A stretch of 64,000 nt of DNA from Octopus sinensis (lineage: Eukaryota), in assembly GCF_006345805.1 (NCBI RefSeq), contig NC_043016.1:17050001-17114000 (forward strand), read 5' to 3'. Under the pieces are notes generated by a model. The model saw nothing but the letters and a program-made list of their open reading frames with translations. It was not told the DNA's origin and did no database searches. Below, one piece after another: positions 1,135 to 39,473 of the stretch (position 1 is its first letter; every line of letters begins with the position of its first letter). A program made the translations under genes and the position numbers.

Positions 1135-1380
1135 CAATTAAAGTGAAAGTATCTGACATTACAATAGAGAGACGATTTCGGTTCATTTTTAACACGTAAT
1201 ACTGAAATAGTGGAGAAGATATGATATTGCTGTGGGGTTACCCTAGGGAAAAAGTTAATATTTTGCCGATGACACTCCCCGGACCCTAAGTAAGGCAAGT
1301 GTAAAATTTGAAGGGAATTGGTTGTGTAGTTCTCAAGTTTTAGGGAATCGTAGTGGAGAAGATATGATATTGCTGTGGGC
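1135..1380 (-). mobile_element. Fragment of non-autonomous Helitron family B (internal repeat region)
   Basis: Reverse complement matches the internal repeats and adjacent sequence of the 35473-36820 element (cttctccactatttcagtattacgtgttaaaa..., ccctaaaacttgagaactacacaacc). Confidence 0.85.
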
Positions 1381-4300
1381 CCAGGCCAGGAGGGGAACCA
1401 TTCCATCTATGCACACCTTCCCCTCCTGGGACACTAAACTCTGCTTTGGAAGACCTGTAGAGGCAAGTGGAATTGAGACCCTAACCTTCTGGCCCTGGCC
1501 AGGAGGGGAACCATTCCATCTATGCACACCTTCCCCTCCTGGGACACTAAACTCTGCTTTGGAAGACCTGTAAAGGCAGGTGGAATTGAGACCCTAACTT
1601 TGTGGCCCTGGCGAGAAGGGGAACCATTCCATCTATGCACTCCTTCCCCTCCTGGGACACTAAACTCTGCTTTGGAAAACCTGTAGAGGCATGTGGAATT
1701 GAGACCCTAACCTTGTGGCCCTGGCCAGGAGGGGAACCATTCCATCTATGCACACCTTCCCCTCCTGGGACACTAAACTTTGCTTTGGAAGACCTGTAGA
1801 GGGAAGTGGAATTGAGACCCTAACCTTGTGGCCCTGGCCAGGAGGGGAACCATTCCATCTATGCACACCTTCCCCTTCTGGGACACTAAACTCTGCTTTG
1901 GAAGACCTGTAGAGGCAAGTGGAATTGAGACCCTAACCTTGTGGCCCAGGCCGGGAGGGGAACCATTCCATCTATGCACACCTTCTCCGCCTGGGACACT
2001 AAACTCTGCTTTGAAAGACCTGTAGAGGCAAGTGGAATTGAGACCCTAACCTTGTGGCCCAGGCCAGGAGGGGAACCATTCCATCTATGCACACCTTCCC
2101 CTCCTGGGACACTAAACTCTGCTTTGAAAGACCTGTAGAGGTAAGTGGAATTGAGACCCTAACATTGTGGCCCTGGCCAGGAGGGGAACCATTCAATCTA
2201 TGCACACCTTCCCCTCCTGGGACACTAAACTCTGCTTTGGAAGACCTGTAGAGGCAAGTGGAATTGAGACCCTAACCTTGTGGCCCAGGCCAGGAGGGGA
2301 ACCATTCCATCTATGCACACCTTCCCCTCCTGGGACACTAAACTCTGCTTTGGAAGACCTGTAGAGGAAGTGGAATTGAGACCCTAACCTTGTAACCCAG
2401 GCCAGGAGGGGAACCATTCCATCAATGCACACCTTCCCCTCCTGGGACACTAAACTCTGCTTTGGAAGACCTAAGAGGCAAGTGGAATTGAGACCCTAAC
2501 CTTGTGGCCCAGGCCAGGAGGGGAAGCATTCCATCTATGCACACCTTCCCCTCCTGGGACACTAAACTCTGCTTTGGAAGACCTGTAGAGGCAAGTGGAA
2601 TTGAGTCCCTAACATTGTGCCCAGGCCAGGGGGAAGCATTCCATCTATGCACACCTTCCCCTCCTGGGACATGAAACTCTGCTTTGGAAGACCTGTAGAG
2701 GCAAGTGAATTGAGACCATAACCTTGTGGCCCAGGCCAGGAGGGGAACCATTCCATCTATGCACACCTTCCCCTCCTGGACACTAAACTCTGCTTTGGAA
2801 GACCTGTAGAGGTAAGTGGAATGGAGACCCTAACCTTGTGGCCCTGGCCAGGAGGGGAACCATTCCATCTATGCACACCTTCCCCTCCTGGGACACTAAA
2901 CTCTGCTTTGGAAGACTTGTAGAGGCAAGTGGAATTGAGACCCTAACCTTGTGGCCCAGGCCAGGAGGGGAACCATTCCATCTATGCACACCTTCCCCTC
3001 CTGGGACACTAAACTCTGCTTAAACTCTGCTTTGGAAGACCTGTAGAGGCAAGTGGAATTGAGACCTTAACCTTGTGGCCCAGGCCGGGAGGGGAACCAT
3101 TCCATCTATGCACACCTTCCCTGCCTGGGACACTAAACTCTGCTTTGAAAGACCTGTAGAGGCAAGTGGAATTGAGACCTTAACCTTCTGGCCCAGGCCA
3201 GGAGGGGAACCATTCCATCTATGCACACCTTCCCCTCCTGGGACACTAAACTCTGCTTTGGAAGACCTGTAGAGGCAAGTGGAATTGAGACCCTAACCTT
3301 GTGGCCCAGGCCAGGAGGGGAACCATTCCATCTATGCACATCTTCCCCTCCTGGGACACTAAACTCTCTGCTTTGGAAGACCTGTAGAGGCAAGTGGAAT
3401 TGAGACCCTAACCTTGTGGCCCAGGCCAGGAGGAAAACCATTCCATCAATGCACACCTTCCCCTCCTGGGACACTAAACTCTGCTTTGGAAGACCTGTAG
3501 AGGCAAGTGGAATTGAGACCCTAACCTTGTGGCCCAGGCCAGGAGGGGAAGCATTCCATCTATGCACACCTTCCCCTCCTGGACACTAAACTCTGCTTTG
3601 GAAGACCTGTAGAGGCAAGTGGAATTGAGTCCCTAACATTGTGGCCCTGGCCAGAGAGGGAAACCATTCCATCTATGCACACCTTCCCCTCCTGGACACT
3701 AAACTCTGCTTTGGAAGACCTGTAGAGGTAAGTGGAATTGAGACCCTAACCTTGTGGCCCTGGCCAGGAGGGGAACCATTCCATCTATGCACACCTTCCC
3801 CTCCTGGGACACTAAACTCTGCTTTGGAAGACTTGTAGAGGCAAGTGGATTGAGACCCTAACCTTGTGGCCCTGGCCAGGAGGGGAACCATTCCATCTAT
3901 GCACACCTTCCCCCCTGGGACACTAAACTCTGCTTTGGAAGACCTGTAGAGGCAAGTGGAATTGAGACCCTAACCTTGTGGCCCTGGCCAGGAGGGGAAC
4001 CATTCCATCTATGCACACCTTCCCCTCCTGGGACACTAAACTCTGCTTTGGAAGACCTGTAGAGGCAAGTGGAATTGAGACCCTAACCTTGTGGCCCAGG
4101 CCAGGAGGGGAAGCATTCCATCTATGCACACCTTCCCCTCCTGGGACACTAAACTCTGCTTTGGAAGACCTGTAGAGGCAAGTGGAATTGAGTCCCTAAC
4201 ATTGTGGCCCAGGCCAGGAGGGGAAGCATTCCATCTATGCACACCTTCCCCTCCTGGGACATTAAACTCTGCTTTAGAAGACCTGTAGAGGCAAGTGGAA

Positions 4301-7300
4301 TTGAGACCCTAACCTTGTGGCCCAGGCTAGGAGGGGAACCATTCCATCTATGCACACCTTCCCCTCCTGGGACACTAAACTCTGCTTTGGAAGACCTGTA
4401 GAGGCAAGTGGAATTGAGACCCTAACCTTGTGGCCCTGGCCAGGAGGGGAACCATTCCATCTATGCACACCTTCCCCTCCTGGGACACTAAACTCTGCTT
4501 TGGAAGACCTGTAGAGGCAAGTGGAATTGAGACCCTAACCTTGTGGCCCTTGCCAGAAGGGGAACCATTCCATCTATGCACACCTTCCCCTCCTGGGACA
4601 CTAAACTCTGCTTTGGAAGACCTGTAGAGGCAAGTGGAATTGAGACCCTAACCTTGTGGCCCTGGCCAGGAGGGGAAACATTCCATATATGCACACCTTC
4701 CCCTCCTGGGACACTAAACTCTGCTTTGGAAGACCTGTAGAGGCAAGTGGAATTGAGTCCCTAACATTGTGGCCCAGGCCAGGAGGGGAAGCATTCCATC
4801 TATGCACACCTTCCCCTCCTGGGACACTAAACTCTGCTTTGGAAGACCTGTAGAGGCAAGTGGAATTGAGACCCTAACCTTCTGGCCCTGGCCAGGAGGG
4901 GAACCATTCCATCTATGCACACCTTCCCCTCCTGGGACACTAAACTTTGCTTTGGAAGACCTGTAGAGGGAAGTGGAATTGAGACCCTAACCTTGTGGCC
5001 CTGGCCAGGAGGGGAACCATTCCATCTATGCACACCTTCCCCTTCTGGGACACTAAACTCTGCTTTGGAAGACCTGTAGAGGCAAGTGGAATTGAAACCC
5101 TAACCTTGTGGCCTAGGCCGGGAGGGGAACAATTCCATCTATGCACACCTTCCCCTCCTGGGACACTAAACTCTGCTTTGGAAGACCTGTAGAAGTAAGT
5201 GGAATTGAGACCCTAACCTTGTGGCCCTGGCCAAGAGGGGAACCATTCCATCTATGCACACCTTCCCCTCCTGGGACACTAAACTCTGCTTTGGAAGACC
5301 TGTAGAGGCAAGTGGAATTGAGACCCTAACCTTGTGGCCCAGACCAGGAGGGGAACCATTCCATCTATGCACACCTTCCCCTCCTGGGACACTAAACTCT
5401 GCTTTGGAAGACCTGTAGAGGCAAGTGGAATTGAGACCCTAACCTTGTGGCCCAGGCCAGGAGGGGAACCATTCCATCAATGCACACCTTCCCCTCCTGG
5501 GACACTAAACTCTGCTTTGGAAGACCTAAGAGGCAAGTGGAATTGAGACCCTAACCTTGTGGCCCAGGCCAGGAGGGGAAGCATTCCATCAATGCACACC
5601 TTCCCCTCCTGGGACACTAAACTCTGCTTTGGAAGACCTGTAGAGGCAAGTGGAATTGAGACCCTACCTTGTGGCCCAGGCCAGGAGGGGAACCATTCCA
5701 TCTATGCACACCTTCCCCTCCTGGGACATAAACTCTGCTTTGGAAGACCTGTAGAGGCAAGTGGAATTGAGACCCTAACCTTGTGGCCCAGGCCAGGAGG
5801 GGAACCATTCCATCTATGCACAACTTCCCCTCCTGGGACACTAAACTCTGCTTTGGAAGACCTGTAGAGGCAAGTGGAATGGAGACCCTAACCTTGTGGC
5901 CCTGGCCAGGAGGGGAACCATTCCATCTATGCACACCTTCCCCTCCTGGGACACTAAACTCTGCTTTGGAAGACCTGTAGAGGCAAGTGGAATTGAGACC
6001 CTAACCATGTGGCTCAGGCCAGGAGGGGAACCATTCCCTCTATGCACACCTTCCCCTCCTGGGACACTAAACTCTGCTTTGGAAGACCTGTAGAGGCAAG
6101 TGGAATTGAGACCCTAACCTTGTGGCCCTGGCCAGGAGGGGAACCATTCCATCTATGCACACCTTCCCCTCCTGGCACACTAAACTGTGCTTTGGAAGAC
6201 CTGTAGAGGCAAGTGGAATTGAGACCCTGACCTTGTGGCCCTGGCCAGGAGGGAACCATTCCATCTATGCACACCTTCCCCTCCTGGGACACTAAACTCT
6301 GCTTTGGAAGACCTGTAGAGACAAGTGGAATTGAGATCCTAACCTTGTGGCCCAGGCCGGGAGGGGAACCATTCCATCTATGCACACCTTCCCCGCCTGG
6401 GACACTAAACTCTGCTTTGAAAGACCTGTAGAGGCAAGTGGAATTGAGACCCTAACCTTCTGGCCCAGGCCAGGAGGGGAAACATTCCATCTATGCACCT
6501 TCCCCTCCTGGGACACTAAACTCTGCTTTGGAAGACCTGTAGAGGTAAGTGGAATTGAGACCCTAACCTTGTGGCTCTGGCCAGGAGGGGAACCATTCCA
6601 TCTATGCACACCTTCCCCTCCTGGGACACTAAACTCTGCTTTGGAAGACCTGTAGAGGCAAGTGGAATTGAGACCCTAACCTTGTGGCCCATGCCAGGAG
6701 GGGAACCATTCCATCTATGCACACCTTCCCCTCCTGGGACACTAAACTCTGCTTTGGAAGACCTGTAGAGGCAAGTGGAATTGAGACCCTAACCTTGTGG
6801 CCCAGGCCAGGAGGGGAAGCATTCCATCTATGCACACCTTCCCCTCCTGTGACACTAAACTCTGCTTTGGAAGACCAGTAGAGGCAAGTGGAATTGAGAC
6901 CCTAACCTTGTGGCCCTGGCCAGGAGGGGAACCATTCCATCTATGCACACCTTCCCCTCCTGGGACACTAAACTCTGCTTTGGAAGACCTGTAGAGGCAA
7001 GTGGAATTGAGACCCTAACCTTGTGGCCCTGGCCAGGAGGGGAACCATTCCATCTATGCACACCTTCCCCTCCTGGGACACTAAACTCTGCTTTGGAAGA
7101 CCTGTAGAGGCAAGTGGAATTGAGACCCTAACCTTGTGGACCAGGCCAGGAGGGGAACCATTCCATCTATGCACACCTTCCCCTCCTGGGAAACTAAACT
7201 CTGCTTTGGAAGACCTGTAGAGGCAAGAGGAATTGAGTCCCTAACATTGTGGCCCAGGCCAGGAGGGGAAGCATTCCATCTATGCACACCTTCCCCTCCT

Positions 7301-10300
7301 GGGACATGAAACTCTGCTTTGGAAGACCTGTAGAGGCAAGTGGAATTGAGACCCCAACCTTGTGGCCCAGGCCAGGAGGGGAACCATTCCATCTATGCAC
7401 ACCTTCCCCTCCTGGGACACTAAACTCTGCTTTGGAAGACCTGTAGAGGTAAGTGGAATTGAGACCCTAACCTTGTGGCCCTGGCCAGGAGGGGAACCAT
7501 TCCATCTATGCACACCTTCCCCTCCTGGGACACTAAACTCTGCTTTGGAAGACCTGTAGAGGCAAGTGGAATTGAGAACCTAACCTTGTGGCCCTGGCCA
7601 GAAGGGGAACCATTCCATCTATGCACACCTTCCCCTCCTGGGACACTAAACTCTGCTTTGGAAGACCTGTAGAGGCAAGTGGAATTGAGACCCTCACCTT
7701 GTGGCCCTGGCCAGGAGGGGCACCATTCCATCTATGCACACCTTCCCCTCCTGGGACACTAAACTCTGCTTTGGAAGACCAGTAGAGGCGAGTGGAATTG
7801 AGACCCTAACCTTGTGGCCCTGGCCAGGAGGGGAACCATTCCATCTATGCACACCTTCCCCTCCTGGGACACTAAACTCTGCTTTGGAAGACCTGTAGAG
7901 GCAAGTGGAATTGAGACCCTGACCTTGTGGCCCTGGCCAGGAGGGGAACCATTCCATCTATGCACACCTTCCCCTCCTGGGACACTAAACTCTGCTTTGG
8001 AAGACCTGTAGAGGCAAGTGGAATTGAGACCCTAACCTTGTGGCCCTGGCCAGAAGGGGAACCATTCCATCTATGCACACCTTCCCCTCCTGGGACACTA
8101 AACTCTGCTTTGGAAGACCTGTAGAGGCAAGTGGAATTGAGACCCTAACCTTGTGGCCCTGGCCAGGAGGGGAACCATTCCATCTATGCACACCTTCCCC
8201 TCCTGGGACACTAAACTCTGCTTTGGAAGACCTGTAGAGGCAAGTGGAATTGAGACCCTAACCTTGTGGCCCTGGCCAGGAGGGGAACCATTCCATCTAT
8301 GCACACCTTCCCCTCCTGGGACACTAAACTCTGCTTTGGAAGACCTGTAGAGGCAAGTGGAATTGAGACCCTAACCATGTGGCCCTGGCCAGGAGGGGAA
8401 CCATTTCATCTATGCACACCTTCCCCTCCTGGGACACTAAACTCTGCTTTGGAAGACCTGTAGAGGCAAGTGGAATTGAGACCCTAACCTTGTGGCCCTG
8501 GCCAGGAGGGGAACCATTCCATCTATGCACACCTTCCCCTCCTGGGACACTAAACTCTGCTTTGGAAGACCTGTAGAGGCAAGTGGAATTGAGACCCTAA
8601 CCTTGTGGCCCTGCCAGGAGGGGAACCATTCCATCTATGCACACCTTCCCCTCCTGGGACACTAAACTCTGCTTTGGAAGACCTGTAGAGGCAAGTGGAA
8701 TTGAGACCCTAACCATGTGGCCCTGGCCAGGAGGGGAACCATTCCATCTATGCACACCTTCCCCTCCTGGGACACTAAACTCTGCTTTGGAAGACCTGTA
8801 GAGGTAAGTGGAATTGAGACCCTAACCTTGTGGCCCTGGCCAGGAGGGGAACCATTCCATCTATGCACACCTTCCCCTCCTGGGACACTAAACTCTGCTT
8901 TGGAAGACCTGTAGAGGCAAGTGGAATTGAGACCCTAACCTTGTGGACCAGGCCAGGAGGGGAACCATTCCATCTATGCACACCTTCCCCTCCTGGGACA
9001 CTAAACTCTGCTTTGGAAGACCTGTAGAGGCAAGAGGAATTGAGTCCCTAACATTGTGGCCCAGGCCAGGAGGGGAAGCATTCCATCTATGCACACATTC
9101 CCCTCCTGGGACATGAAACTCTGCTTTGGAAGACCTGTAGAGGCAAGTGGAATTGAGACCCCAACCTTGTGGCCCAGGCCAGGAGGGGAACCATTCCATC
9201 TATGCACACCTTCCCCTCCTGGGACACTAAACTCTGCTTTGGAAGACCTGTAGAGGTAAGTGGAATTGAGACCCTAACCTTGTGGCCCTGGCCAGAAGGG
9301 GAACCATTCCATCTATGCACACCTTCCCCTCCTGGGACACTAAACTCTGCTTTGGAAGACCTGTAGAGGCAAGTGGAATTGAGACCCTAACCTTGTGGCC
9401 CTGGCCAGGAGGGGCACCATTCCATCTATGCACACCTTCCCCTCCTGGGACACTAAACTCTGCTTTGGAAGACCTGTAGAGGCAAGTGGAATTGAGACCC
9501 TGACCTTGTGACTCTGGCCAGGAGGGAACCATTCCATCTATGCACACCTTCCTGGGACACTAAACTCTGCTTTGGAAGACCTGTAGAGGCAAGTGGAATT
9601 GAGACCCTAACCTTGTGGCCCTGGCCAGAAGGGGAACCATTCCATCTATGCACACCTTCCCCTCCTGGGACACTAAACTCTGCTTTGGAAGACCTGTAGA
9701 GGCAAGTGGAATTGAGACCCTAACCTTGTGGCCCTGGCCAGGAGGGGAACCATTCCATCTATGCACACCTTCCCCTCCTGGGACACTAAACTCTGCTTTG
9801 GAAGACCTGTAGAGGCAAGTGGAATTGAGACCCTAACCTTGTGGCCCTGGCCAGGAGGGGAACCATTCCATCTATGCACACCTTCCCCTCCTGGGACACT
9901 AAACTCTGCTTTGGAAGACCTGTAGAGGCAAGTGGAATTGAGACCCTAACCTTGTGGCCCAGGCCAGGAGGGCAACCATTCCATCTATGCACACCTTCCC
10001 CTCCTGGGACACTAAACTCTGCTTTGGAAGACCTGTAGAGGCAAGTGGAATTGAGACCCTAACCTTGTGGCCCTGGCCAGGAGGGGAACCATTCCATCTA
10101 TGCACACCTTCCCCTCCTGGGACACTAAACTCTGCTTTGGAAGACCTGTAGAGGCAAGTGGAATTGAGACCCTAACCTTGTGGCCCAGGCCAGGAGGGGA
10201 ACCATTCCATCTATGCACACCTTCCCCTCCTGGGAAACTAAACTCTGCTTTGGAAGACCTGTAGAGGCAAGAGGAATTGAGTCCCTAACATTGTGGCCCA

Positions 10301-13300
10301 GGCCAGGAGGGGAAGCATTCCATCTATGCACACCTTCCCCTCCTGGGACATAAACTCTGCTTTGGAAGACCTGTAGAGGCAAGTGGAATTGAGACCCAAC
10401 CTTGTGGCCCAGCCAGGAGGGGAACCATTCCATCTATGCACACCTTCCCCTCCTGGGACACTAAACTCTGCTTTGGAAGACCTGTAGAGGTAAGTGGAAT
10501 TGAGACCCTAACCTTGTGGCCCTGGCCAGGAGGGGAACCATTCCATCTATGCACACCTTCCCCTCCTGGGACACTAAACTCTGCTTTGGAAGACCTGTAG
10601 AGGCAAGTGGAATTGAGAACCTAACCTTGTGGCCCTGGCCAGAAGGGGAACCATTCCATCTATGCACACCTTCCCCTCCTGGGACACTAAACTCTGCTTT
10701 GGAAGACCTGTAGAGGCAAGTGGAATTGAGACCCTAACCTTGTGGCCCTGGCCAGGAGGGGCACCATTCCATCTATGCACACATCCCCTCCTGGGACACT
10801 AAACTCTGCTTTGGAAGACCAGTAGAGGCGAGTGGAATTGAGACCCTAACCTTGTGGCCCTGGCCAGGAGGGGAACCATTCCATCTATGCACACCTTCCC
10901 CTCCTGGGACACTAAACTCTGCTTTGGAAGACCTGTAGAGGCAAGTGGAATTGAGACCCTGACCTTGTGGCCCTGGCCAGGAGGGAACCATTCCATCTAT
11001 GCACACCTTCCCCTCCTGGGACACTAAACTCTGCTTTGGAAGACCTGTAGAGGCAAGTGGAATTGAGACCCTAACCTTGTGGCCCTGGCCAGAAGGGGAA
11101 CCATTCCATCTATGCACACCTTCCCCTCCTGGGACACTAAACTCTGCTTTGGAAGACCTGTAGAGGCAAGTGGAATTGAGACCCTAACCTTGTGGCCCTG
11201 GCCAGGAGGGGAACCATTCCATCTATGCACACCTTCCCCTCCTGGGACACTAAACTCTGCTTTGGAAGACCTGTAGAGGCAAGTGGAATTGAGACCCTAA
11301 CCTTGTGGCCCTGGCCAGGAGGGGAACCATTCCATCTATGCACACCTCCCCTCCTGGGACACTAAACTCTGCTTTGGAAGACCTGTAGAGGCAAGTGGAA
11401 TTGAGACCCTAACCATGTGGCCCTGGCCAGGAGGGGAACCATTCCATCTATGCACACCTTCCCCTCCTGGGACACTAAACTCTGCTTTGGAAGACCTGTA
11501 GAGGCAAGTGGAATTGAGACCCTAACCTTGTGGCCCTGGCCAGGAGGGGAACCATTCCATCTATGCACACCTTCCCCTCCTGGGACACTAAACTCTGCTT
11601 TGGAAGACCTGTAGAGGCAAGTGGAATTGAGACCCTAACCTTGTGGCCCTGGCCAGGAGGGGAACCATTCCATCTATGCACACCTTCCCCTCCTGGGACA
11701 CTAAACTCTGCTTTGGAAGACCTGTAGAGGCAAGTGGAATTGAGACCCTAACCATGTGGCCCTGGCCAGGAGGGGAACCATTCCATCTATGCACACCTTC
11801 CCCTCCTGGGACACTAAACCCTGCTTTGGAAGACCTGTAGAGGTAAGTGGAATGGAGACCCTAACCTTGTGGCCCTGGCCAGGAGGGGAACCATTCCATC
11901 TATGCACACCTTCCCCTCCTGGGACACTAAACTCTGCTTTGGAAGACTTGTAGAGGCAAGTGGAATTGAGACCCTAACCTTGTGGCCCAGGCCAGGAGGG
12001 GAACCATTCCATCTATGCACACCTTCCCCTCCTGGGACACTAAACTCTGCTTTGGAAGACCTGTAGAGGCAAGTGGAATTGAGACCTTAACCTTGTGGCC
12101 CAGGCCGGGAGGGGAACCATTCCATCTATGCACACCTTCCCTGCCTGGGACACTAAACTCTGCTTTGAAAGACCTGTAGAGGCAAGTGGAATTGAGACCC
12201 TAACCTTCTGGCCCAGGCCAGGAGGGGAACCATTCCATCTATGCACACCTTCCCCTCCTGGGACACTAAACTCTGCTTTGGAAGACCTGTAGAGGTAAGT
12301 GGAATTGAGACCCTAACCTTGTGGCTCTGGCCAGGAGGGGAACCATTCCATCTATGCACACCTTCCCCTCCTGGGACACTAAACTCTGCTTTGGAAGACC
12401 TGTAGAGGCAAGTGGAATTGAGACCCTAACCTTGTGGCCCAGGCCAGGAGGGGAACCATTCCATCTATGCACATCTTCCCCTCCTGGGACACTAAACTCT
12501 GCTTTGGAAGACCTGTAGAGGCAAGTGGAATTGAGACCCTAACCTTGTGGCCCAGGCCAGGAGGGGAACCATTCCATCAATGCACACCTTCCCCTCCTGG
12601 GACACTAAACTCTGCTTTGGAAGACCTGTAGAGGCAAGTGGAATTGAGACCCTAACCTTGTGGCCCAGGCCAGGAGGGGAAGCATTCCATCTATGCACAC
12701 CTTCCCCTCCTGGGACACTAAACTCTGCTTTGGAAGACCTGTAGAGGCAAGTGGAATTGAGTCCCTAACATTGTGGCCCAGGCCAGGAGGGGAACCATTC
12801 CATCTATGCACACCTTCCCCTCCTGGGACACTAAACTCTGCTTTGGAAGACCTGTAGAGGTAAGTGGAATTGAGACCCTAACCTTGTGGCCCTGGCCAGG
12901 AGGGGAACCATTCCATCTATGCACACCTTCCCCTCCTGGGACACTAAACTCTGCTTTGGAAGACTTGTAGAGGCAAGTGGAATTGAGACCCTAACCTTGT
13001 GGCCCAGGCCAGGAGGGGAACCATTCCATCTATTCACACCTTCCCCTCCTGGGACACTAAACTCTGCTTTGGAAGACCTGTAGAGGCAAGTGGAATTGAG
13101 ACCCTAACATTGTGGCTCAGGCCAGGAGGGGAACTATTCCATCTATGCACACCTTCCCCTCCTGTGACACTAAACTCTGCTTTGGAAGACCAGTAGAGGC
13201 AAGTGGAATTGAGACCCTAACATTGTGGCCCTGGCCAGGAGGGGAACCATTCCATCTATGCACACCTTCCCCTCCTGGGACACTAAACTCTGCTTTGGAA

Positions 13301-14545
13301 GACCTGTAGAGGCAAGTGGAATTGAGATCCTGACATTGTGGCCCTGGCCAGGAGGGAACCATTCCATCTATGCACACCTTCCCCTCCTGGGACACTAAAC
13401 TCTGCTTTGGAAGACCTGTAGAGGCAAGTGGAATTGAGACCCTAACCTTGTGGCCCTGTCCAGAAGGGGAACCATTCCATCTATGCACACCTTCCCCTCC
13501 TGGGACACTAAACTCTGCTTTGGAAGACCTGTAGAGGCAAGTGGAATTGAGACCCTAACCTTGTGGCCCTGGCCAGGAGGGGAACCATTCCATCTATGCA
13601 CACCTTCCCCTCCTGGGACACTAAACTCTGCTTTGGAAGACCTGTAGAGGCAAGTGGAATTGAGACCCTAACCTTGTGGCCCAGGCCAGGAGGGGAAGCA
13701 TTCCATCTATGCACACCTTCCCCTCCTGGGACACTAAACTCTGCTTTGGAAGACCTGTAGAGGCAAGAGGAATTGAGTCCCTAACATTGTGGCCCAGGCC
13801 AGGAGGGGAAGCATTCCATCTATGCACACCTTCCCCTCCTGGGACATGAAACTCTGCTTTGGAAGACCTGTAGAAGCAAGTGGAATTGAGACCCTAACCT
13901 TGTGGCCCTGGCCAGGAGGGGAACCATTCCATCTATGCACACCTTCCCCTCCTGGGACACTAAACTCTGCTTTGGGAGACCTGTTGAGGCAAGTGGAATT
14001 GAGACCCTAACCTTGTGGCCCAGGCCAGGAGGGGAACCATTCCATCTATGCACACCTTCCCCTCCTGGGACACTAAACTCTGGTTTGGAAGACCTGTAGA
14101 GGCAAGTGGAATTGAGACCCTAACCTTGTGGCCCAGGCCAGGAGGGGAACCATTCCATCTATGCACACCTTCCCCTCCTGGGACACTAACTCTGCTTTGG
14201 AAGACCTGTAGAGGCAAGTGGAATTGAGACCCTAACCTTGTGGCCCAGGCCAGGAGGGGAACCATTCCATCTATGCACACCTTCCCCTCCTGGGACACTA
14301 AACTCTGCTTTGGAAGACCTGTAGAGGCAAGTGGAATTGAGACCCTAACCTTGTGGCCCAGGCCAGGAGGGGAACCATTCCATCTATGCACACCTTCCCC
14401 TCCTGGGACACTAAGCTCTGCTTTGGAAGACCTGTAGAGGCAAGTGGAATTGAGACCCTAACCTTGTGGCCCTGGCCAGGAGGGGAACCATTCCATCTAT
14501 GCACACCTTCCCCTCCTGGGACACTAAACTCTGCTTTGAAAGACC
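1378..14545. repeat. Satellite array, 113-bp monomer, ~116 copies
   Basis: Consensus ccctaaccttgtggcc(c/a-t)ggccaggaggggaaccattccatctatgcacaccttcccctcctgggacactaaactctgctttggaagacctgtagaggcaagtggaattgaga. The 113-bp period is visible in the ORF track spacing. About 54% GC. Confidence 0.98.
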
Positions 14546-16766
14546 ATTTGAGGCAATTTAAATCGAAATGAAATCGATTGCAAAGACCAATTGAGGCAAT
14601 TTAAATCGAATTCAAATCGATTGCAAAGACCAATTGAGGCAATTAAAATCGAATTCAAATCGATTGGAAAGACCCATTGAGGCAATTTAAATCGAATTCA
14701 AATCGATTGCAAAGACCCAATGAGGCAATTAAAATCGAATTCAAATCGAATGCAAAAACCAATTGAGGCAATTAAAATCGAATTCGAATCGATTGCGAAG
14801 ACCAATTTAGGCAATTTAAATCGAATTCAAATCGATTGCAAAGACCAATTGAGGCAATTAAAATCGAAATCAAATCGATTGCAAAAACCACTTGAGGCAA
14901 TTAAAATCGAAATCAATTCGATTGGGAAGACCAATTGAGGCAATTAAAATCGAATTCAAATCGATTGCAAAGACCAATTGAGGCAATTAAAATCTAAATC
15001 AAATCGATTGCAAAGACCAATTGAGGCAATTAAAATCGAAATCAAATCGATTGCGATGACCAATTGAGGCAATTAAAATCGAAATCAAATCGATTGCGAA
15101 GACCACTTGAGGCAATTTAAATCGAATTCAAATCTATTGCAAAGACCCATTGAGGCAACTTAAATCGAATACAAATCGATTCCAAAGACCCATTGAGGCA
15201 ATTTAAATCGAAATAAAATCGATTGCAAAGACCATTTGAGGCAATTTAAATCGAATTCAAATCGATTGCAAAGACCAATTGAGGCAATTTAAATCGAATT
15301 CAAATCGATTGCAAAGACCAATTGAGGCAATTAAATTCGAAATAAAATCGATTGCAAAGACCAATTGAGGCAATTTAAATCGAATTCAAATCGATAACAA
15401 AGACCAATTGAGGCAATTAAAATCGAAATCAAATCGATTGCGAAGAGCAATTGAGGCAATTAAAATCGAAATCAAATCGATTGCGAAGACCAATTGAGGC
15501 AATTTAAATCGAATTCAAATCGATTGCAAAGACCCATTGAGGCAATTTAAATCGAATTCAAATCGATTGCAAAGACCCATTGAGTCAATTTAAATCGAAT
15601 TCAAATCGATTGCAAAGACCAATTGAGGCAATTTAAATCGAATTCAAATCGATTGCAAAGACCCATTGAGTCAATTTAAATCGAATTCAAATCGATTGCA
15701 AAGACCCAATGAGGCAATTTAAATCGAATTCAAATCGATTGCAAAGACCAGTTGAGGCAATTTAAATCGTAATGAAATCGATTGCAAAGACCCATTGAGG
15801 CAATTTAAATCGAATTCAAATCGATTGCAAAGACCAATTGAGGCAATCAAATTCGAAATAAAATCGATTGCAAGGACCAATTGAGGCAATTTAAATCGAA
15901 TTCAAATCGATTGCAAAGACCAATTGAGGCAATTAAAATCGAATTCAAATCGATTGCAAAGACCCATTGAGTCAATTTAAATCGAATTCAAATCGATTGC
16001 AAAGACCAATTGAGGCAATTTAAATCGAATTCAAATCGATTGCAAAGACTAATTGAGGCAATTTAAATCGAATTCAAATCGATTCCAAAGACCAATTGAG
16101 GCAATTTAAATCGAATTCAAATCGATTGCAAAGACCCATTGAGTCAATTTAAATCGAATTCAAATCGATTGCAAAGACCCAATGAGGCAATTTAAATCGA
16201 ATTCAAATCGATTGCAAAGACCAGTTGAGGCAATTTAAATCGAAATCAAATCGATTGCGAAGACCAATTGAGGCAATTAAAATCGAATTCAAATCGATTG
16301 CAAAGACCCATTGAGTCAATTTAAATCGAATTCAAATCGATTGCAAAGACCAATTGAGGCAATTAAATTCGAAATAAAATCGATTGCAAAGACCAATTGA
16401 GGCAATTTAAATCGAATTCAAATCGATTGCAAAGACCAATTGAGGCAATTAAAATCGAAATCAAATCGATTGCGAAGACCAATTGAGGCAATTAAAATCG
16501 AAATCAAATCGATTGCGAAGACCAATTGAGGCAATTTAAATCGAATTCAAATCGATTGCAAAGACCCATTGAGGCAATTTAAATCGAATTCAAATCGATT
16601 GCAAAGACCCATTGAGTCAATTTAAATCGAATTCAAATCGATTGCAAAGACCCATTGAGGCAATTTAAATCGAATTCAAATCGATTGCAAAGACCAATTG
16701 AGGCAATTTAAATCGAATGCAAATCGATTGCATAGACCAATTGAGGCAATTTAAATCGATATCAAA
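14540..16766. repeat. Satellite array, 43-bp monomer, ~52 copies
   Basis: Consensus aagaccaattgaggcaatttaaatcgaattcaaatcgattgca. About 33% GC. Confidence 0.98.
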
Positions 16767-16769
16767 CTT

Positions 16770-16990
16770 ACTCTTACTATTGTACTCCTTTACATGTTTC
16801 AGTCATTTGACTGCGGCCATGCTGGAGCACCGCCTATTTTTTAGTCGAGTAAATCGACAACCCGGGACTAATTCTTTGTAAGCCCAGTACTTACTAAGTG
16901 ACGGGGACATAAACACACCAGCATCGGTTGTCAAGCAATGCTAGGTGTACAAACACAGACACACAAACACACATATATACATACATATAT
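16770..16990 (-). mobile_element. SINE S1 3' half
   Basis: ttgtttcagtcatttgactgcggccatgctggagcaccgcc...gtcaagcaatgctagg...acaaacacagacac. Confidence 0.85.
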
Positions 16991-16993
16991 TTA

Positions 16994-17365
16994 TGGAATG
17001 GAAGCACTCCGTCGGTTACGACGACGAGGGTTCCGGTTGATCCGAATCAACGGAACAGCTTGCTCGTGAAATTAACGTGTCAGTGGCTGAGCACTCCGCA
17101 GACACGTGTACCCTTAATGTAGTTCTCGGGGATATTCAGCGTGACACAGAGAGTGACAAGGCCGGCCCTTTGAAATACAGGAAGTAAGAGTGGGAGAAAG
17201 AGTGGTTTAAGAGTACAGCAGGGATCACCACCATCCCCTGCCGGAGCTGCGTGGAGCTTTAGGTGTTTTCGCTCAATAAACACTCACAACGCACGGTCTG
17301 GGAATTGAAACCGCGATCCTATGACCGCGAGTCCGCTGCCCTAACCACTGGGCCATTGCGCCTCC
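16994..17365 (-). mobile_element. Full-length tRNA-Arg-like SINE family S2, tail type a (probably octopus OR1/OR2 class)
   Basis: Minus-strand head gaggcgcaatggcccagtggttagggcagcggactcgcggtc...gcggtttcaattccc has A/B-box-like motifs and TCG in an anticodon-like loop. Tail ...cctcgtcgtcgtaaccgacggagtg. The family name is from recall. Confidence 0.8.
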
Positions 17366-22287: not shown

Positions 22288-22795
22288 TAGAGTGGCTGTG
22301 TGTTAAGTAGCTTGCTAACCAACCACATGGTTCAGGGTTCAGTCCCACTGCGTGGCACCTTGGACAAGTGTCTTCTGCTATAGCCCCGGGCCGACCAAAG
22401 CCTTGTGAGTGGATTTGGTAGACGGAAACTGAAAGAAGCCCGTCGTATATACGTATATGGGCGTAGGAGTGGCTGTGTGGTAAGCAGCTTGCTTACCAAC
22501 CACATGGTCGGGTTCAGTCCCACTGCGTGGCATCTTGGCCAAGTGTCTTCTACTATAGCCCCGGGCCGACCAAAGCCTTGTGAGTGGATTTGGTAGGCGG
22601 AAACTGAAAGAAGCCCGTCGTATATACGTATATGGGCGCAGGAGTGGCTGTGTGGTAAGTAGCTTGCTAAACAACCACATGGTTCCGGGTTCAGTCCCAC
22701 TGCGTGGCATCTTGGGTAAGTGTCTTCTACTATAGCCCCGGGCCGACCAAAGCCTTGTGAGTGGATTTGGTAGACGGAAACTGAAAGAAGCCCAA
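22288..22795 (+). mobile_element. Three tandem SINE S1 head modules
   Basis: ggagtggctgtgtggtaag...gaaactgaaagaagccc three times; opposite orientation to the copy ending at 22145. Confidence 0.9.
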
Positions 22796-23954: not shown

Positions 23955-25480
23955 CCCGTGTGGGAGGCACATAAAAGGCACCAACCAATCGTGGATGATG
24001 CCAGACACCTCTGGCCCCTAAATTGGTGGCACATAAAAAGCACCAACCGATCATGGTTGATACCAGATCCCTCTGGCACTTGTGTTGGTGGCACATAAAA
24101 AGCACCAACCGATCATGGTTGATACCAGATCCCTCTGGCACTTGTGTTGGTGGCACATAAAAAGCACCGACCGATCGTAGCTGTTGCCAGCCACCTCTGG
24201 CCCCTAAATTGGTGGCACATAAAAAAGCACCAACCGATCATGGTTGATTCCAGATCTCTCTCGCCCCTAAATTGGTGGAACTTAAAAAGCACCAAGCGAT
24301 CATGGTTGATGTCAGACCCCTCTTGTCCCTAAATTGGTGGCACATAAAAAGCACCAACCGATCGTGGTTGATTCCAGATCTCTCTCGCCCCTAAATTGGT
24401 GGCACATAATAAGCACCAACAAAACATGGTTGATGTCAGAAGCCTCTGGCCCCTAAATTGATGGCACATAAAAAGCACCAACCGATCATGGTTGATACCA
24501 GATCCCTCTGTCCCCTAAATTGGAGGCACATAAAAAGCACCAACACATCCCTCTGGTCCCTAAATTGGTGGCACATAAAAAGCACCAACAGATCCCTCTG
24601 GTCCCTAAATTGGTGGCACATAAAAAGCACCAACACATCCCTATGTCCCCAAAATTGGTGGCACATAAAAAGCACCAACAGATCCTTCTGGTCCCTAAAT
24701 TGGTGGCACATAAAAAGCACCAACAGATCCCTCTGGTCCCTAAATTGGTGGCACATATAAAGCACCAACAGATCCCTCTGGTCCCTAAATTGGTGGCACA
24801 TAAAAAGCACCAACAGATCCCTCTGGGGCTAAATTGGTGGCACATAAAAAGCACCAACAGATCCCTCTGGGCCCTAAATTGGTGGCACATAAAAAGCACC
24901 AACAGATCCCTCTGGTCCCTAATTGGTAGCACATAAAAAGCACCAACAGATCGTGCTGGTCCCTAAATTGGTGGTGCATAAAAAGCACCAACAGATCCCT
25001 CTGGTCCCTAAATTGGTGGCACATAAAAAGCACCAACCGATCATGGTTGATGCCAGATCCCTCTGTCCCCTAAATTGGTGGCACATAAAAAGCACCAACA
25101 CATCCCTCTGGTCCCTATTTTGGTGGCACATAAAAAGCACCAACAGATCCCTCTGGTCCCTAAATTGGTGGCACATAAAAAGCACCAACAGATCCCGCTG
25201 GTCCCTAAATTGGTGGCACATAAAAAGCACCAACAGATCCCTCTGGTCCCTAAATTGGTGGCACATAAAAAGCACCAACAGATCCCTCTGGTCCCTAAAT
25301 TGGTGGCACATAAAAAGCACCAACCGATCATGGTTGATACCAGATCACTCTAGCCCCTAAATTGGTGGCACATAAAAAGCACCAACCGATCGTGGTTTAT
25401 GCCAGATCTCTCTCGCCCCTAAATTGGTGGCACATAAAAAGCACCAACCGATCATGGGTGATTCCAGATCCCTCTGGTAC
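23955..25480 (+). repeat. Minisatellite with 45-bp and ~62-64-bp units
   Basis: Core tggtggcacataaaaagcaccaac-agatccctctggtccctaaat. Long units add cgatcatggttgat. The 15-aa periodic ORFs reflect the 45-bp period. Confidence 0.95.
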
Positions 25481-28810: not shown

Positions 28811-29069
28811 ACAAGCCACACTGCCGTTCACAAACACGTAACTATGCGCAGGCGAAAGGATGTTGTTCCCATGACAACAGCTAATCTCCTTAATTAGATG
28901 GGAAACGTGTGAGCAGATGAGTCATCGCCTGTGATGAGGATATTTAGAAAGTTATTATCACCATGGTGATGGTGATGGTGGGAGAGATGTTGACAGATGC
29001 CTGCTTCTCCTATCAATAAAATCCCACAGTGTGACCTGCCGAAAACTAAGGTCACGCCAGGTCACTTCG

Positions 29070-30066
29070 TAGGAGTGGCTGTGTGGTAAGTAGCTTGTTT
29101 ACCAACCACATGGTTCCGGGTTCAGTCCCACTGCGTGGCAACTTGGGCAAGTGTCTTCTGCTATAGCCCTGGGCCGACCAAAGCCTTGTGAGTGGATTTG
29201 GTAGACGGAAACCGAAAGAAGCCCGTCGTATACATGTGTATAGGTGTAGGAGTGGCTGTGTGGTAGGTAGCTTGTTTACCAACCACATGGTTCTGGTTCA
29301 GTCCCACTGCGTGGAATCTTGGGCAAGTGTCTTCTGCTATAGCCTCGGGCCGACCAAAGCCTTCTGAGTGGATTTGGTAGACGGAAACTGAAAGAAGCCC
29401 GTCGTATATATGTATATATATATGTATATATGTATATAGGCGCAGGAGTGACTGTGTGGTAAGTAGCTTGTTTACCAACCACATGGTTCCGGGTTCAGTC
29501 CCACTGCGTGGCAACTTGGGAAAGTGTCTTCTGCTATAGCCTCGGGCCGACCAAAGCCTTGTGAGTGGATTTGGTAGACGGAAACCGAAAGAAGCCCGTC
29601 GTATACATGTATATAGGTGTAGGAGTGGCTGTGTGGTAGGTAGCTTGTTTACGAACCACATGAATCCGGGTCCAGTCCCACTGCGTGGCATCTTGGGCAA
29701 GTGTCTTCTGCTATAGCCTCGGGCCGACCAAAGCCTTGTGAGTGGATTTGGTAGATGGAAACTGAAAGAAGACCATCGTATATATATGTACAGGCGTAGG
29801 AGTGGCTGTGTGGTAAGTAGCTTGCTTACCAACCACATGGTTCCGGGTTCAATCCCACTGCGTGGCACCTTGGGCAAGTGTCTTCTCCTATAGCCTCGGG
29901 CCGACCAAAGCCTTCTGAGTGGATTTGGTAGACGGAAACTGAAAGAAGCCCGTCGTATATAAGTATATATATATGGCTGTGTGGTAAGTAGCTTGTTTAC
30001 CAACCACATGGTTCCGGGTTCAGTCCCACTGCGTGGCACCTTGGGCAACTGTCTTCTACTATAGCC
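29070..30066 (+). mobile_element. Tandem array of ~6 SINE S1 head modules
   Basis: ggagtggctgtgtgg...gaaagaagcccgtcgtata repeated. Confidence 0.9.
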
Positions 30067-30775
30067 TTTCAGTTTTCGCCTACCAAATCCACTCACAAGG
30101 CTTTGGTCGGCCCGGGGCTATAGCAGAAGACACTTGCCCAAGATGCCACGCAGTGGGACTGAACCGGAAACATGTGATTGGTTAGCAAGCTACTTACCAC
30201 ACAGCCACTCCTACACCTATATATATATATATATATACATATATACGACAGTCTTCTTTCAGTTTCCGTCTACCAAATCCACTCAAAAGCATTGGTCAGC
30301 CCGGGGCTATAGCAGAAGACACTTGCCCAAGATGCCACGCAGTGGGACTGAACCCGGAACCATGTGGTTGGTTAGCAAGCTACTTACCACACAGCCACTC
30401 CTACACCTATATATATATACATATACATATATACGACAGGCTTCTTTCAGTTTCCGTCTACCAAATCCACTCACAAGGCTTGGTCGGCCCGGGGCTATAG
30501 CAGAAGACACTTGCCCAAGATGCCACGCAGTGGGACTGAACCCGGAACCATGTGGTTGGTTAGCAAGCTTCTTAACACACAGCCACTCCTATGCCTATAT
30601 ATATATATATATATATACGATGGGCTTCTTTCAGTTTCCGTCTACCAAATCCACTCACAAGGCATTGGTCGGCCCGGGGCTATAGCAGAAGACACTTGCC
30701 CAAGATGCCACGCAGTGGGACTGAACCCGGAACCATGTGGTTGGTTAGCAAGCTACTTACCACACAGCCACTACT
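30067..30775 (-). mobile_element. Tandem array of 4 SINE S1 head modules, inverted relative to 29070-30066
   Basis: tttcagtttccgtctaccaaatcc...ccacacagccact repeated; orientation flips at 30066/30067. Confidence 0.9.
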
Positions 30776-33899: not shown

Positions 33900-34367
33900 T
33901 GCTGCGAGCCGCGATACCAGTGCCGGTGACACGTAAGCGTACCATCCGATAGTGACCGTTGCCAGCGCCGTCCTGACTGGCTTCCGTGCCGGTGGCACGT
34001 AAAAAGCACTATCCGATCGTGGCCGTTGCCGCCTAGACTGGTCCCCGTGCTGGTGGGACGTAAAAAGCACCATCCGATACTGGCCGTTGCCAGCGCCGCC
34101 CCAACTGGCCCTCGTGCCGGTGGCACGTAAAAAGCACCATCCATCCGTGGCCGTTTACCAACCCCATCTGGCACCTGTGCGGGTGGCACGTAAAAAGCAC
34201 CCACTACACTCACGGAGTGGTTGGCGTTAGGAAGGGCATCCAGCCGTAGAAACACTGCCAGATGAGACTGGGTCTGGTGCAGCCTTCTGGTTTCCCAGAC
34301 CCCAGTTGAACCGTCCAGCCCATGCTAGCATGGAAAGCGGACGCTAAACGATGATATGATGATATAT

Positions 34368-39079: not shown

Positions 39080-39430
39080 GGGTGGGTGTGTGGTAAGTAG
39101 CTTGCTTACCAACCATATGGTTCTGGGTTCAGTCCCACTGCGTGGAACTTTGGGCAAGTGTCTTCAACTATAGCCCCTTGGGTAAGTGTCTTCTATTATA
39201 GCCTCGGGCCGACCAAAGCCTTGTGAGTGGATTTGGTAGACGGAAACTGAAAGAAGCCCGCCGTATACATATATATATATATAGGCTGTGTGGTAGGTAG
39301 CTTGCTTACCAACCACATGATCCCGGGTTCAGTCCCACTGCGGGGCACCTTGGGCAAGTGTCTTCTACTGTAGCCCCGGGCCGACCAAAGCCTTGTGAGT
39401 GGATTTGGTCGACGGAAACTGAAAGAAGCC

Positions 39431-39473
<43 letters not shown>

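What the first reader, a model, noticed from the sequence alone, without database searches (positions are those of the whole stretch)
14520..14600. Two different satellites share a 17-bp motif and switch from one to the other inside it
Seen: the 113-mer contains AAGACC-tgta-GAGGCAA-gTggAATtGA and the 43-mer contains AAGACC-aatt-GAGGCAA-tTtaAATcGA. That is 13/17 identity with identical spacing, plus partial identity beyond. The 13-kb array converts to the 43-bp array with no spacer, exactly at this motif (14540-14556, aagacc-attt-gaggcaa). The rest of the two monomers is dissimilar (54% vs 33% GC). Inference: either the 43-mer arose from a sub-segment of the 113-mer, or both keep a bipartite protein-binding box (analogous in concept to the CENP-B box) that also acts as the recombination point.
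Basis: partly seen in the sequence, partly recalled or inferred. Interest (0 to 1): 0.75.

Follow-up and report, generated by a model that had tools for sequence, protein, structure and literature searches.

The report
Two satellite arrays joined at shared motif
Two different tandem-repeat (satellite) arrays in a repeat-rich animal genome meet, with no spacer, at the one short stretch they share, which looks like an ordinary homology-guided joint of a kind already described in nematodes and fruit flies rather than a protein-binding box.

Summary
A 113-bp satellite (1378-14539, about 117 copies, 54% GC) changes without a spacer into a 43-bp satellite (14540-16766, about 52 copies, 33% GC). The two consensus monomers share one significant segment: AAGACC-N4-GAGGCAA plus 10 more bases, 20 of 27 identical and 14 of 17 in the box. 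Shuffles reach that score in 1 to 5 of 4000 trials.

The joint is in register. There are 116 whole 113-mers, then 51 whole 43-mers, all phased on AAGACC. The switch lies in 14539-14545, at the 5' half-site; a random phase pair shares 6 or more bases only 0.5% of the time.

The other end of the 113-bp array also joins its flank through a 5-bp microhomology, TGTGG.

The box is not more conserved than the rest of the 113-mer and only weakly so in the 43-mer. It has no CENP-B box similarity and is absent from the other tandem repeats in the window.

The best reading is a homology-guided joint (template switch or illegitimate recombination) in a homeologous segment, possibly inherited from a common ancestor. 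Birth of one satellite from the other at this site remains possible. Close precedents exist in Meloidogyne (Box 1) and Drosophila (Rsp-like/1.688). It is a new example of a known kind and of modest interest.

The parts
1138..1379 (+). Left flank: a truncated copy of an element that carries 143-150-bp tandem repeats. Fuller copies lie at 35524-36371 on the minus strand.
   Evidence: BLAST of 1000-1400 against the window: 1138-1380 matches 36371-36125 (minus strand) at 87.5% identity, plus further 150-mer copies.
1374..1378 (+). Left joint of the 113-bp array: the 5-bp microhomology TGTGG is shared by the 150-mer (…ATTGCTGTGGGGTTACC) and the 113-mer (…CCTTGTGGCCC).
   Evidence: Three-way comparison of junction, 150-mer and 113-mer. 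An overlap of 5 or more bases occurs in 0.67% of all phase combinations.
1378..14539 (+). 113-bp satellite array, about 116.8 copies, 54% GC. Each unit holds a perfect 12-bp inverted repeat, CCAGGAGGGGAA/TTCCCCTCCTGG. The left-end units are about twice as diverged as those at the junction end.
   Evidence: Differences per unit average about 5 in the first 20 units and about 2.4 in the last 20.
14427..14539 (+). The last complete 113-mer in AAGACC phase. It differs from consensus at one base only, its final base (G to A at 14539).
14539..14545 (+). Breakpoint interval, A+AAGACC. It is bounded by the 113-specific G14538 and the 43-specific A14546.
14540..14566 (+). Junction copy of the shared 27-nt homeologous segment (box 14540-14556, AAGACC-ATTT-GAGGCAA, then TTTAAATCGA). 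At every discriminating position it carries the 43-type base or neither type; it carries the 113-type base at none.
14540..16766 (+). 43-bp satellite array, 51 whole units plus a partial one, 33% GC. All units are exactly 43 bp and fall into several subtypes.
16767..17000 (+). Right flank: a dispersed repeat whose 5' end is (TACTCTTT)n-TACTTGTTTCAGTCATTTGACTGCGG. More than ten copies occur in the window. The 43-bp array does not resume beyond it.
   Evidence: Neither satellite is found elsewhere in the window.

Best explanation
This is a real, in-register joint between two distinct satellites. It formed by a homology-guided DNA transaction at the only segment they share. The likeliest route starts with a 3' end from the 43-bp array whose bottom strand ends …TTGCCTC-AAAT-GGTCTT-3'. 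That end annealed to a 113-mer through the two perfect half-sites (7 + 6 bp, 20/27 overall) and was extended into 113-bp repeats. This would be replication template switching of the FoSTeS/MMBIR type, or microhomology- or homeology-mediated end joining or unequal exchange. Such an event leaves 43-type sequence from the spacer onward and 113-type sequence upstream of AAGACC, which is what is seen. The motif acts as a pairing substrate because it is identical in both repeats, not because a protein recognises it. The shared 27-nt core itself is most simply a remnant of common ancestry between the two repeat families, or a similarity that was selected because it allowed the joint to form. Shown: the similarity, the register, the breakpoint interval, the microhomology at both ends of the 113-bp array, and the lack of extra conservation of the box. 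Inferred: the enzymatic pathway, the order of events and the origin of the shared core.
For: The similarity is beyond chance (1-5 of 4000 shuffles; D2 word statistics at about 1%). The joint falls within one of only three shared words of 6 or more bases, with P=0.0047 for that much overlap at a random phase pair. The 14 of 21 matches downstream of AAGACC (P=5e-5) are what annealing of a longer primer would favour. The joint is sharp: the last 113-mer has 1 difference from consensus and the first 43-mer has 3, and the first 43-mer carries no 113-type bases at the 7 discriminating positions. Two mature repeats were therefore joined, with no relic intermediates. The junction end of the 113-bp array is no more diverged than its core, whereas the left end is about twice as diverged. 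The other end of the 113-bp array also joins its flank through a 5-bp microhomology (TGTGG, P=0.0067). The box is not specially conserved. Published precedents exist. Rsp-like/1.688 satellite junctions in Drosophila lie at 7-bp and 4-bp microhomologies and are attributed to MMEJ, FoSTeS or MMBIR (PMC7403614). Transitions between divergent Meloidogyne satellites lie exactly at a conserved 17-bp box (PMC3694981).
Against: Only one junction is available, and no reads, no second locus and no sister species can be examined. A 74% identical 27-nt homeology is short for true homologous recombination, and pure MMEJ needs only the 6 bp, so the extra similarity is explained by selection of the template or by ancestry, neither of which is tested. 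The same structure arises automatically if one satellite was born next to the other. The left and right boundaries could come from unrelated events. Several of the statistics (word tiling, conditional matches) were defined after seeing the data.
Confidence: 0.5

Rival explanations
1. One satellite was born from the other at this site, so the joint is in register by descent. In one version, the 43-mer grew from the box segment of a terminal 113-mer: slippage between the two AGACC words 25 nt apart in the 113-mer, then an 11-bp internal duplication. In the reverse version, an old, diverged edge fragment of a short AT-rich repeat (27 nt) plus about 86 bp of unrelated GC-rich DNA was amplified as a 113-bp unit by unequal exchange against the first 43-mer, following the A-B-A' to (A-B)n-A' scheme.
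For: The similarity is significant and confined to one contiguous core. Without its 9/11 internal 11-bp duplication, the 43-mer would be a 32-mer, of which 27 nt align to the 113-mer. In the 113-mer the 27-nt core is followed at once by a second AAGACC-like word, GAGACC. The first 17 nt of the 43-mer are fully tiled by the words AAGACC, AATTGAG and GAGGCAA, all taken from a 30-nt piece of the 113-mer (0 of 1000 shuffles, a post hoc statistic). The spacer variants AGTA (in 113-mers) and AGTT (in 43-mers) bridge TGTA and AATT by single steps. The window holds a clear example of a derived monomer switching in register: the 62-mer/45-mer arrays at 23966-25475.
Against: The cores are 26% diverged while the arrays are 92-96% homogeneous, so a birth event would be old. 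Yet the monomers on both sides of the joint are near-consensus and no degenerate intermediates exist. The left end of the 113-bp array lies at a different monomer phase with its own microhomology, which this model does not explain. The bridging spacer variants are no more than expected from random substitution.
Confidence: 0.3
2. AAGACC-N4-GAGGCAA is a bipartite binding site for a protein, for example a centromere protein derived from a pogo-type transposase, in the manner of CENP-B. Selection keeps it in both satellites, and the protein promotes site-specific breakage and rejoining there.
For: The half-sites are identical with identical spacing and a variable spacer. In the 43-mer the half-sites vary at 2.0% against 12% for the spacer and 4.8% overall. 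The joint lies at the box. The same idea was proposed for Meloidogyne Box 1 (PMC3694981).
Against: In the 113-mer the box is not more conserved than the rest (67 of 113 mask placements do as well). The trend in the 43-mer is not significant (6 of 43 placements; Mann-Whitney p=0.08). There is no match to the CENP-B box beyond shuffled expectation. No other tandem repeat family in the window has the box, and the only hits with 2 or fewer mismatches elsewhere (2) match the chance expectation of 1.2. Indels and rearrangements inside the 113-bp array do not cluster at the box. A 13-kb array embedded in transposable elements is not obviously centromeric.
Confidence: 0.07
3. The joint is an assembly or library artefact: a chimeric read or mis-join between two arrays that lie elsewhere in the genome.
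For: Satellite arrays are error-prone in assemblies. In-vitro template switching also produces chimeras at microhomologies. No reads are available here.
Against: The longest exact identity shared across the joint is 6-7 bp, far too short for an assembler overlap. The junction unit carries its own variants (spacer ATTT, AAATGAAATCG) that recur in other 43-mers rather than being a consensus paste. Both arrays are continuous with unique flanks in one 64-kb stretch.
Confidence: 0.05
4. Pure coincidence: unrelated satellites happened to be adjacent, and the similarity and register carry no meaning.
For: The window has a dozen or more tandem repeat families, so many pairs could have been compared. 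Weak box-like matches also occur in the 150-mer and in a 392-bp repeat at levels that are not significant.
Against: The similarity P of about 0.001 and the independent register P of about 0.005 multiply to about 1e-5, which survives correction for some 70 pairs.
Confidence: 0.03

Closest known systems
Box 1 (CENP-B box-like) at monomer transitions in Meloidogyne chitwoodi and M. fallax satellite DNAs (Mestrovic et al. 2013, PMC3694981)
   Same: A 17-bp motif is kept between satellites that are otherwise only 32-64% identical. Transitions from one satellite monomer type to another lie exactly at the motif. Illegitimate recombination or a transposition-like mechanism was proposed.
   Different: In Meloidogyne the box is shared by six or more satellites, is a demonstrated low-variability domain, recurs at many junctions inside higher-order repeats, and resembles the human CENP-B box (10-12 of 17). 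Here there are two satellites and one junction, no extra conservation in the 113-mer, and no CENP-B similarity.
Rsp-like/1.688 satellite junctions on the Drosophila simulans and D. mauritiana X chromosomes (Sproul et al. 2020, PMC7403614)
   Same: Two unrelated satellites abut with an overlap of shared bases (7 bp TGGTACC, 4 bp). This was interpreted as microhomology-mediated repair (MMEJ, FoSTeS/MMBIR), possibly through eccDNA. Here the overlap is 6 bp at one end of the 113-bp array and 5 bp at the other.
   Different: In Drosophila the same junction type recurs at many loci, the inserted satellite sits inside arrays of the other, and eccDNA was measured. Here the overlap is embedded in a longer 20/27 homeology, the arrays are simply adjacent, and recurrence and eccDNA cannot be tested.
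Abrupt satellite-to-flank transitions in mollusc satellites (Satovic et al. 2016, PMC5139131)
   Same: Junctions are sharp, with no degenerate transition zone. The flanks include pieces of transposable elements and of other satellites. Insertion or recombination of short arrays was proposed.
   Different: In that study junctions mapped non-randomly for only one of the four satellites, inside a palindrome. Here both ends map to microhomologies. The host here is not identified.
Human CENP-B box in alpha satellite
   Same: Only the concept matches: a 17-bp motif inside a satellite monomer.
   Different: There is no sequence similarity: the best match is 5-6 of the 9 essential bases and 9-10 of 17 overall, equal to shuffled monomers. 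No binding protein or centromere location is known here.

Membership tests
Conserved-box satellite junction (Meloidogyne Box 1 type) | A short motif is shared by satellites that are otherwise dissimilar. | tested here: met
   Identity is 20/27 (14/17 in the box), with 1-5 of 4000 shuffles as good. The rest of the monomers are unrelated.
Conserved-box satellite junction (Meloidogyne Box 1 type) | The transition between monomer types is located exactly at the motif. | tested here: met
   The breakpoint interval 14539-14545 is the 5' half-site, and the joint is in register with no spacer.
Conserved-box satellite junction (Meloidogyne Box 1 type) | The motif is a domain of low variability within the monomers. 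| tested here: not met
   113-mer: 0.019 against 0.022 variants per site, and 67 of 113 mask placements do as well. 43-mer: weak trend only, 6 of 43 placements, p=0.08.
Conserved-box satellite junction (Meloidogyne Box 1 type) | The motif recurs in several satellites and at many junctions or higher-order repeats. | tested here: inconclusive
   No other tandem repeat family in the window carries it. The rest of the genome cannot be searched. Scans of viral and metagenome collections gave only chance single hits.
Microhomology-mediated satellite joint (Rsp-like/1.688 type) | The two repeat sequences overlap by several bases at the joint, more than chance gives. | tested here: met
   6 bp (AAGACC), P=0.0047. 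[quoted passage not shown]
Microhomology-mediated satellite joint (Rsp-like/1.688 type) | The same junction type recurs at multiple loci, and the satellite is present on eccDNA. | not testable with these tools
   This needs the whole genome assembly and eccDNA sequencing.
CENP-B box | The 17-bp consensus YTTCGTTGGAARCGGGA with 9 essential bases (nTTCGnnnnAnnCGGGn). | tested here: not met
   The best match is 5 of 9 (113-mer) and 6 of 9 (43-mer) essential bases, and 10 of 17 and 9 of 17 overall. Shuffled monomers average 10.2 and 9.2.
Centromeric satellite | Association with CENP-A chromatin, or a megabase-scale array at the primary constriction. | not testable with these tools
   The arrays are 13.2 kb and 2.2 kb and are embedded in SINE- and LINE-rich DNA. 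No chromatin data are available.
Tandem-repeat-bearing transposable element (Helitron/Helentron or MITE with internal satellite) | Arrays are bounded by defined element termini that recur at other loci. | tested here: inconclusive
   The left flank is a truncated element with 150-bp internal repeats that recurs at 35.5-36.4 kb, but there it has no 113-mers or 43-mers. No termini were identified.

The most novel reading that the evidence does not exclude
AAGACC-N4-GAGGCAA is a true bipartite recognition site for a DNA-binding protein, such as a domesticated transposase. Under this reading it is retained in otherwise unrelated satellites of this genome (probably a mollusc) and catalyses site-specific switching between satellite arrays. 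That would be a second, independently evolved system of the CENP-B-box kind, with recombination activity.
Probability: 0.06. Interest if true: 0.75.

Novelty: new member of a known kind. Interest (0 to 1): 0.3.

Why it matters
Sharp joints between different satellites are rarely resolved at base level. Each such joint shows how satellite arrays are seeded, moved and replaced. This one adds a clean example in which both ends of a 13-kb array sit on microhomologies and one end lies in a longer homeologous core shared by two very different repeats. It fits the view that satellites spread and change neighbours by microhomology-guided repair or template switching, and that short shared motifs between divergent satellites can serve as pairing sites. 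It does not by itself open a new question. Its value would rise only if a genome-wide scan showed the same box at many joints or a protein that binds it.

Tried and rejected
1. Looking for the satellites elsewhere. A pattern that matches both repeats (AAGACCNNNNGAGGCAANTNNAATNGA) gave 0 hits in viral contigs. It gave 5 single-copy hits in metagenome contigs, all chance matches in unrelated, non-repetitive contigs.

2. Using the translated 113-bp array as bait. A 143-aa ORF on the minus strand, searched against the protein database to find other contigs carrying the satellite, gave no hits.

3. Full-text search of papers for six sequence strings from the satellites and the SINE-like repeats gave nothing. 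Literature searches for octopus or cephalopod satellites gave nothing relevant.

4. Identifying the organism. The LINE reverse-transcriptase ORF has a best hit at 74% identity in NCBI assembly GCA_024449705.1. That accession could not be resolved to a name. My impression that the SINE-like repeats are cephalopod (octopus) comes from memory only.

5. Either satellite elsewhere in the window: no significant match (E>0.7).

6. Rfam and tRNA scans found nothing.

7. A hairpin-driven mechanism. The 113-mer has a perfect 12-bp stem, but its overall folding energy equals that of shuffles (z=-0.11). The 43-mer dimer gives z=-1.4.

8. Relationship of the 150-mer and the 392-bp repeat to the box. The similarities are suggestive but not significant (p=0.09-0.35 and p=0.08).

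9. The box as an internal rearrangement hot spot. Indels are scattered single bases, and the one 11-nt duplication lies upstream of the box.
Full report
**Context**

The window is eukaryotic and consists almost entirely of repeats:
- many microsatellites;
- a SINE-like element of about 175-200 bp, present in dozens of copies;
- other dispersed repeats;
- a frameshifted LINE with a reverse-transcriptase domain at 49.4-52.4 kb on the minus strand;
- a dozen or more tandem repeat families.

No RNA family or tRNA was detected. I could not identify the organism. The LINE ORF is 74% identical to a protein from NCBI assembly GCA_024449705.1, which I could not resolve to a name. My impression that the dispersed repeats are cephalopod comes from memory and was not tested.

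**The observation**

Tandem Repeats Finder gives a 113-bp array at 1378-14556 (116.8 copies, 96% matches). It gives a 43-bp array at 14539-16766 (51.8 copies, 92% matches).

I phased all units and built consensuses:
- 113-mer: AAGACCTGTAGAGGCAAGTGGAATTGAGACCC… (54.0% GC)
- 43-mer: AAGACCAATTGAGGCAATTTAAATCGAATTCAAATCGATTGCA (32.6% GC)

Both half-sites, AAGACC and GAGGCAA, are identical with the same 4-nt spacing. One spacer base and 6 of the next 10 bases also match. That gives 14/17 in the box and 20/27 overall.

**Is the similarity more than chance?**

Over all rotations and both strands, this 27-nt segment is the best ungapped local alignment of the two consensuses (score 13). Shuffled monomers average 7.0 (sd 1.15). 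Of 4000 shuffles, 5 (43-mer shuffled) and 1 (113-mer shuffled) reach 13. Results from other scoring schemes:

| Test | Shuffles reaching the observed value |
|---|---|
| Lenient gapped scoring | 2-4 of 1000 |
| Strict gapped scoring | 16-20 of 1000 |
| Word-sharing statistics (D2, k=5-7) | 1-3% |

The remaining 16 nt of the 43-mer have no counterpart in the 113-mer (540 of 2000 shuffles do as well). They are largely an internal 11-bp duplication (AAATCGAATTC/AAATCGATTGC, 9/11).

The third shared word of 6 or more bases, AATTGAG, lies on another diagonal: 113-mer position 21, 43-mer position 6. As a result, the first 17 nt of the 43-mer are completely tiled by three words taken from a 30-nt piece of the 113-mer. 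No shuffle in 1000 does this, but I defined that statistic after seeing the data.

**The joint**

Phased on AAGACC, the 113-bp array consists of 116 whole units after its partial first unit. The last unit (14427-14539) differs from consensus only at its final base.

The 43-bp array follows immediately with 51 whole units. The first has 3 differences from consensus, all of them variants seen in other 43-mers.

G14538 is 113-specific and A14546 is 43-specific. A14539 is the usual 43-mer base, but it also occurs in a few internal 113-mers such as 3143-3154. The switch therefore lies in 14539-14545, at the 5' half-site. At none of the seven positions that discriminate the two cores does the junction unit carry the 113-type base.

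Only 0.47% of the 4859 possible phase pairs would show 6 or more bases of overlap. Given AAGACC, 14 of 21 matches downstream has a binomial P of 5e-5. Similarity and register are independent lines of evidence and together exclude coincidence.

**The other boundaries**

The left end of the 113-bp array (1374-1380) abuts a truncated copy of an element with 143-150-bp internal repeats. This element also lies at 35.5-36.4 kb on the other strand, without 113-mers. The two sequences overlap by TGTGG. An overlap of 5 or more bases occurs in 0.67% of phase pairs. This boundary is at a different monomer phase (position 44) from the right one.

The right end of the 43-bp array (16766) abuts a dispersed repeat with a (TACTCTTT)n head. 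There is no notable overlap, and the array does not resume beyond it.

Units at the left end of the 113-bp array are about twice as diverged from consensus as units next to the 43-mers (about 5 against about 2.4 differences per unit). The junction end therefore does not look like an old, poorly homogenised edge.

**Is the box special?**

- Per-site variant frequencies in the 113-mer are 0.019 in the 13 half-site positions and 0.022 overall. Of the 113 circular placements of the same 6+4+7 mask, 67 are at least as conserved.
- In the 43-mer the half-sites are at 0.020, against 0.12 in the spacer and 0.048 overall. Six of 43 placements do as well, and Mann-Whitney gives p=0.08.
- Positions shared by the two satellites are not more conserved than unshared ones.
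- The CENP-B box is not matched better than in shuffled monomers.
- With up to 2 mismatches on both strands, the box occurs only in the two arrays, plus two hits in a 392-bp repeat. The chance expectation is 1.2.
- Indels in the 113-bp array are scattered single bases. The one larger event, an 11-nt tandem duplication at about 3010-3031, lies upstream of the box.

Nothing here points to a constraint on the box beyond the concerted evolution that keeps every position of these arrays uniform.

**Mechanism**

The data fit a homology-guided joint best. A resected or nascent 3' end from the 43-bp array (…TTGCCTC-AAAT-GGTCTT-3' on the bottom strand) can pair with a 113-mer through 7 + 6 perfect bases, with further matches behind them. 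Extending it copies 113-bp repeats. The product has 43-type sequence from the spacer onward and 113-type sequence upstream of AAGACC, as observed.

Unequal or illegitimate exchange in the same segment would give the same product. [quoted passage not shown]

I rate this reading at about 0.5.

The main rival, at about 0.3, is that one repeat was born from the other at this site, which gives an in-register joint automatically. In its favour:
- The similarity is a single contiguous core.
- Without its 11-bp duplication the 43-mer is a 32-mer, of which 27 nt align to the 113-mer.
- In the 113-mer the core is followed at once by a second AAGACC-like word, GAGACC.

Against it:
- The cores are 26% diverged, yet the monomers at the joint are near-consensus with no relics.
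- The left boundary needs a separate event.

The two readings are compatible in part. A core inherited from a common ancestor could later have served as the pairing site.

The remaining rivals are less likely:
- Functional protein box: about 0.07.
- Assembly or library artefact: about 0.05. The longest shared identity is 7 bp, and the junction unit has its own variants.
- Coincidence: about 0.03.

**Comparison with what is known**

In Meloidogyne, transitions between satellites of 32-64% identity lie exactly at a conserved 17-bp Box 1. The authors proposed illegitimate recombination or transposition-like cut-and-paste (PMC3694981).

On the Drosophila simulans-clade X chromosome, Rsp-like/1.688 junctions lie at 7-bp and 4-bp microhomologies. 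They are attributed to MMEJ or FoSTeS/MMBIR, with eccDNA as a possible vehicle (PMC7403614).

Mollusc satellites show abrupt junctions to flanks that contain pieces of transposable elements and of other satellites (PMC5139131). Tribolium satellites show microhomology at preferred insertion sites (PMC11610590).

The present joint works like these. It meets two defining features of the Meloidogyne type (shared motif, transition at the motif). It fails the low-variability feature in the 113-mer and cannot be tested for recurrence. It meets the overlap criterion of the Drosophila type. It is not a CENP-B box.

**Verdict**

This is a new example of a known kind of satellite-satellite joint. Interest is modest (0.3) unless a genome-wide scan or a binding assay shows the box to be recurrent or bound by a protein.

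Noticed in passing
window 23966-25475: A second in-register period switch between related tandem repeats: 62-mer (23966-24544), then 45-mer (24499-25329), then 62-mer (25279-25475). The 45-mer is the 62-mer minus the 17 nt CCGATCATGGTTGATGC. A related 67-mer lies at 33920-34201. This shows what a clearly derived monomer looks like in this genome.
   Followed up: partly
window 1282-1301 and 36055-36074 (minus strand): The 150-bp repeat flanking the 113-bp array carries GACC-CTAAGTA-AGGCAAGTG. It is a box-like element with a spacer 2 nt longer and shares the 9-mer AGGCAAGTG with the 113-mer. The overall 150-mer against 113-mer alignment is not significant (p=0.09-0.35), so possible three-way kinship stays open.
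   Followed up: partly
window 45011-47712 (seven copies): A repeat of about 229-392 bp contains AAGACC-CTGC-GGCGCAA-GTTG…AATTGAGA. It aligns collinearly with about 46 nt of the 113-mer around the box, but only at p=0.08.
   Followed up: partly
every 113-mer, e.g. window 14472-14515: A perfect 12-bp inverted repeat, CCAGGAGGGGAA…TTCCCCTCCTGG, with a 20-nt loop. The whole-monomer folding energy is not unusual (z=-0.11).
   Followed up: partly
window 14540-16732: All 51 complete 43-mers are exactly 43 bp with no indel. The 113-mers carry about 30 scattered 1-nt indels. The 43-mers fall into several subtypes (spacer A or C at position 7, T or A at position 20, T or A at position 29) in recurring multi-unit blocks.
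   Followed up: no
window 2578, 4165, 7210, 9017, 10254, 13750 (unit starts): A distinct 113-mer subtype with 6-7 linked substitutions recurs at irregular intervals of 1.2-3.5 kb. This suggests large segmental duplications inside the array.
   Followed up: no
window 3010-3031: An 11-nt tandem duplication (AAACTCTGCTT twice) inside one 113-mer, just upstream of the box. It is the only multi-base insertion in the array.
   Followed up: yes
window 49453-52446, minus strand: A frameshifted non-LTR retrotransposon with endonuclease-like and reverse-transcriptase ORFs. Homologues carry Pfam PF00078 (reverse transcriptase) or PF13966 (zf-RVT). The best database hit is 74% identical, in assembly GCA_024449705.1.
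   Followed up: partly
window 63423-63470: An interstitial (CCCTAA)8 telomere-type repeat.
   Followed up: no
window 17400-62980, many sites (e.g. 22290-22793, 29069-30772, 39284-40570): A SINE-like unit of about 175-200 bp (…GGTTCCGGGTTCAGTCCCACTGCGTGG…) occurs in dozens of copies on both strands. It is often in short tandem runs separated by (TA)n. ARAGORN calls no tRNA in it.
   Followed up: no
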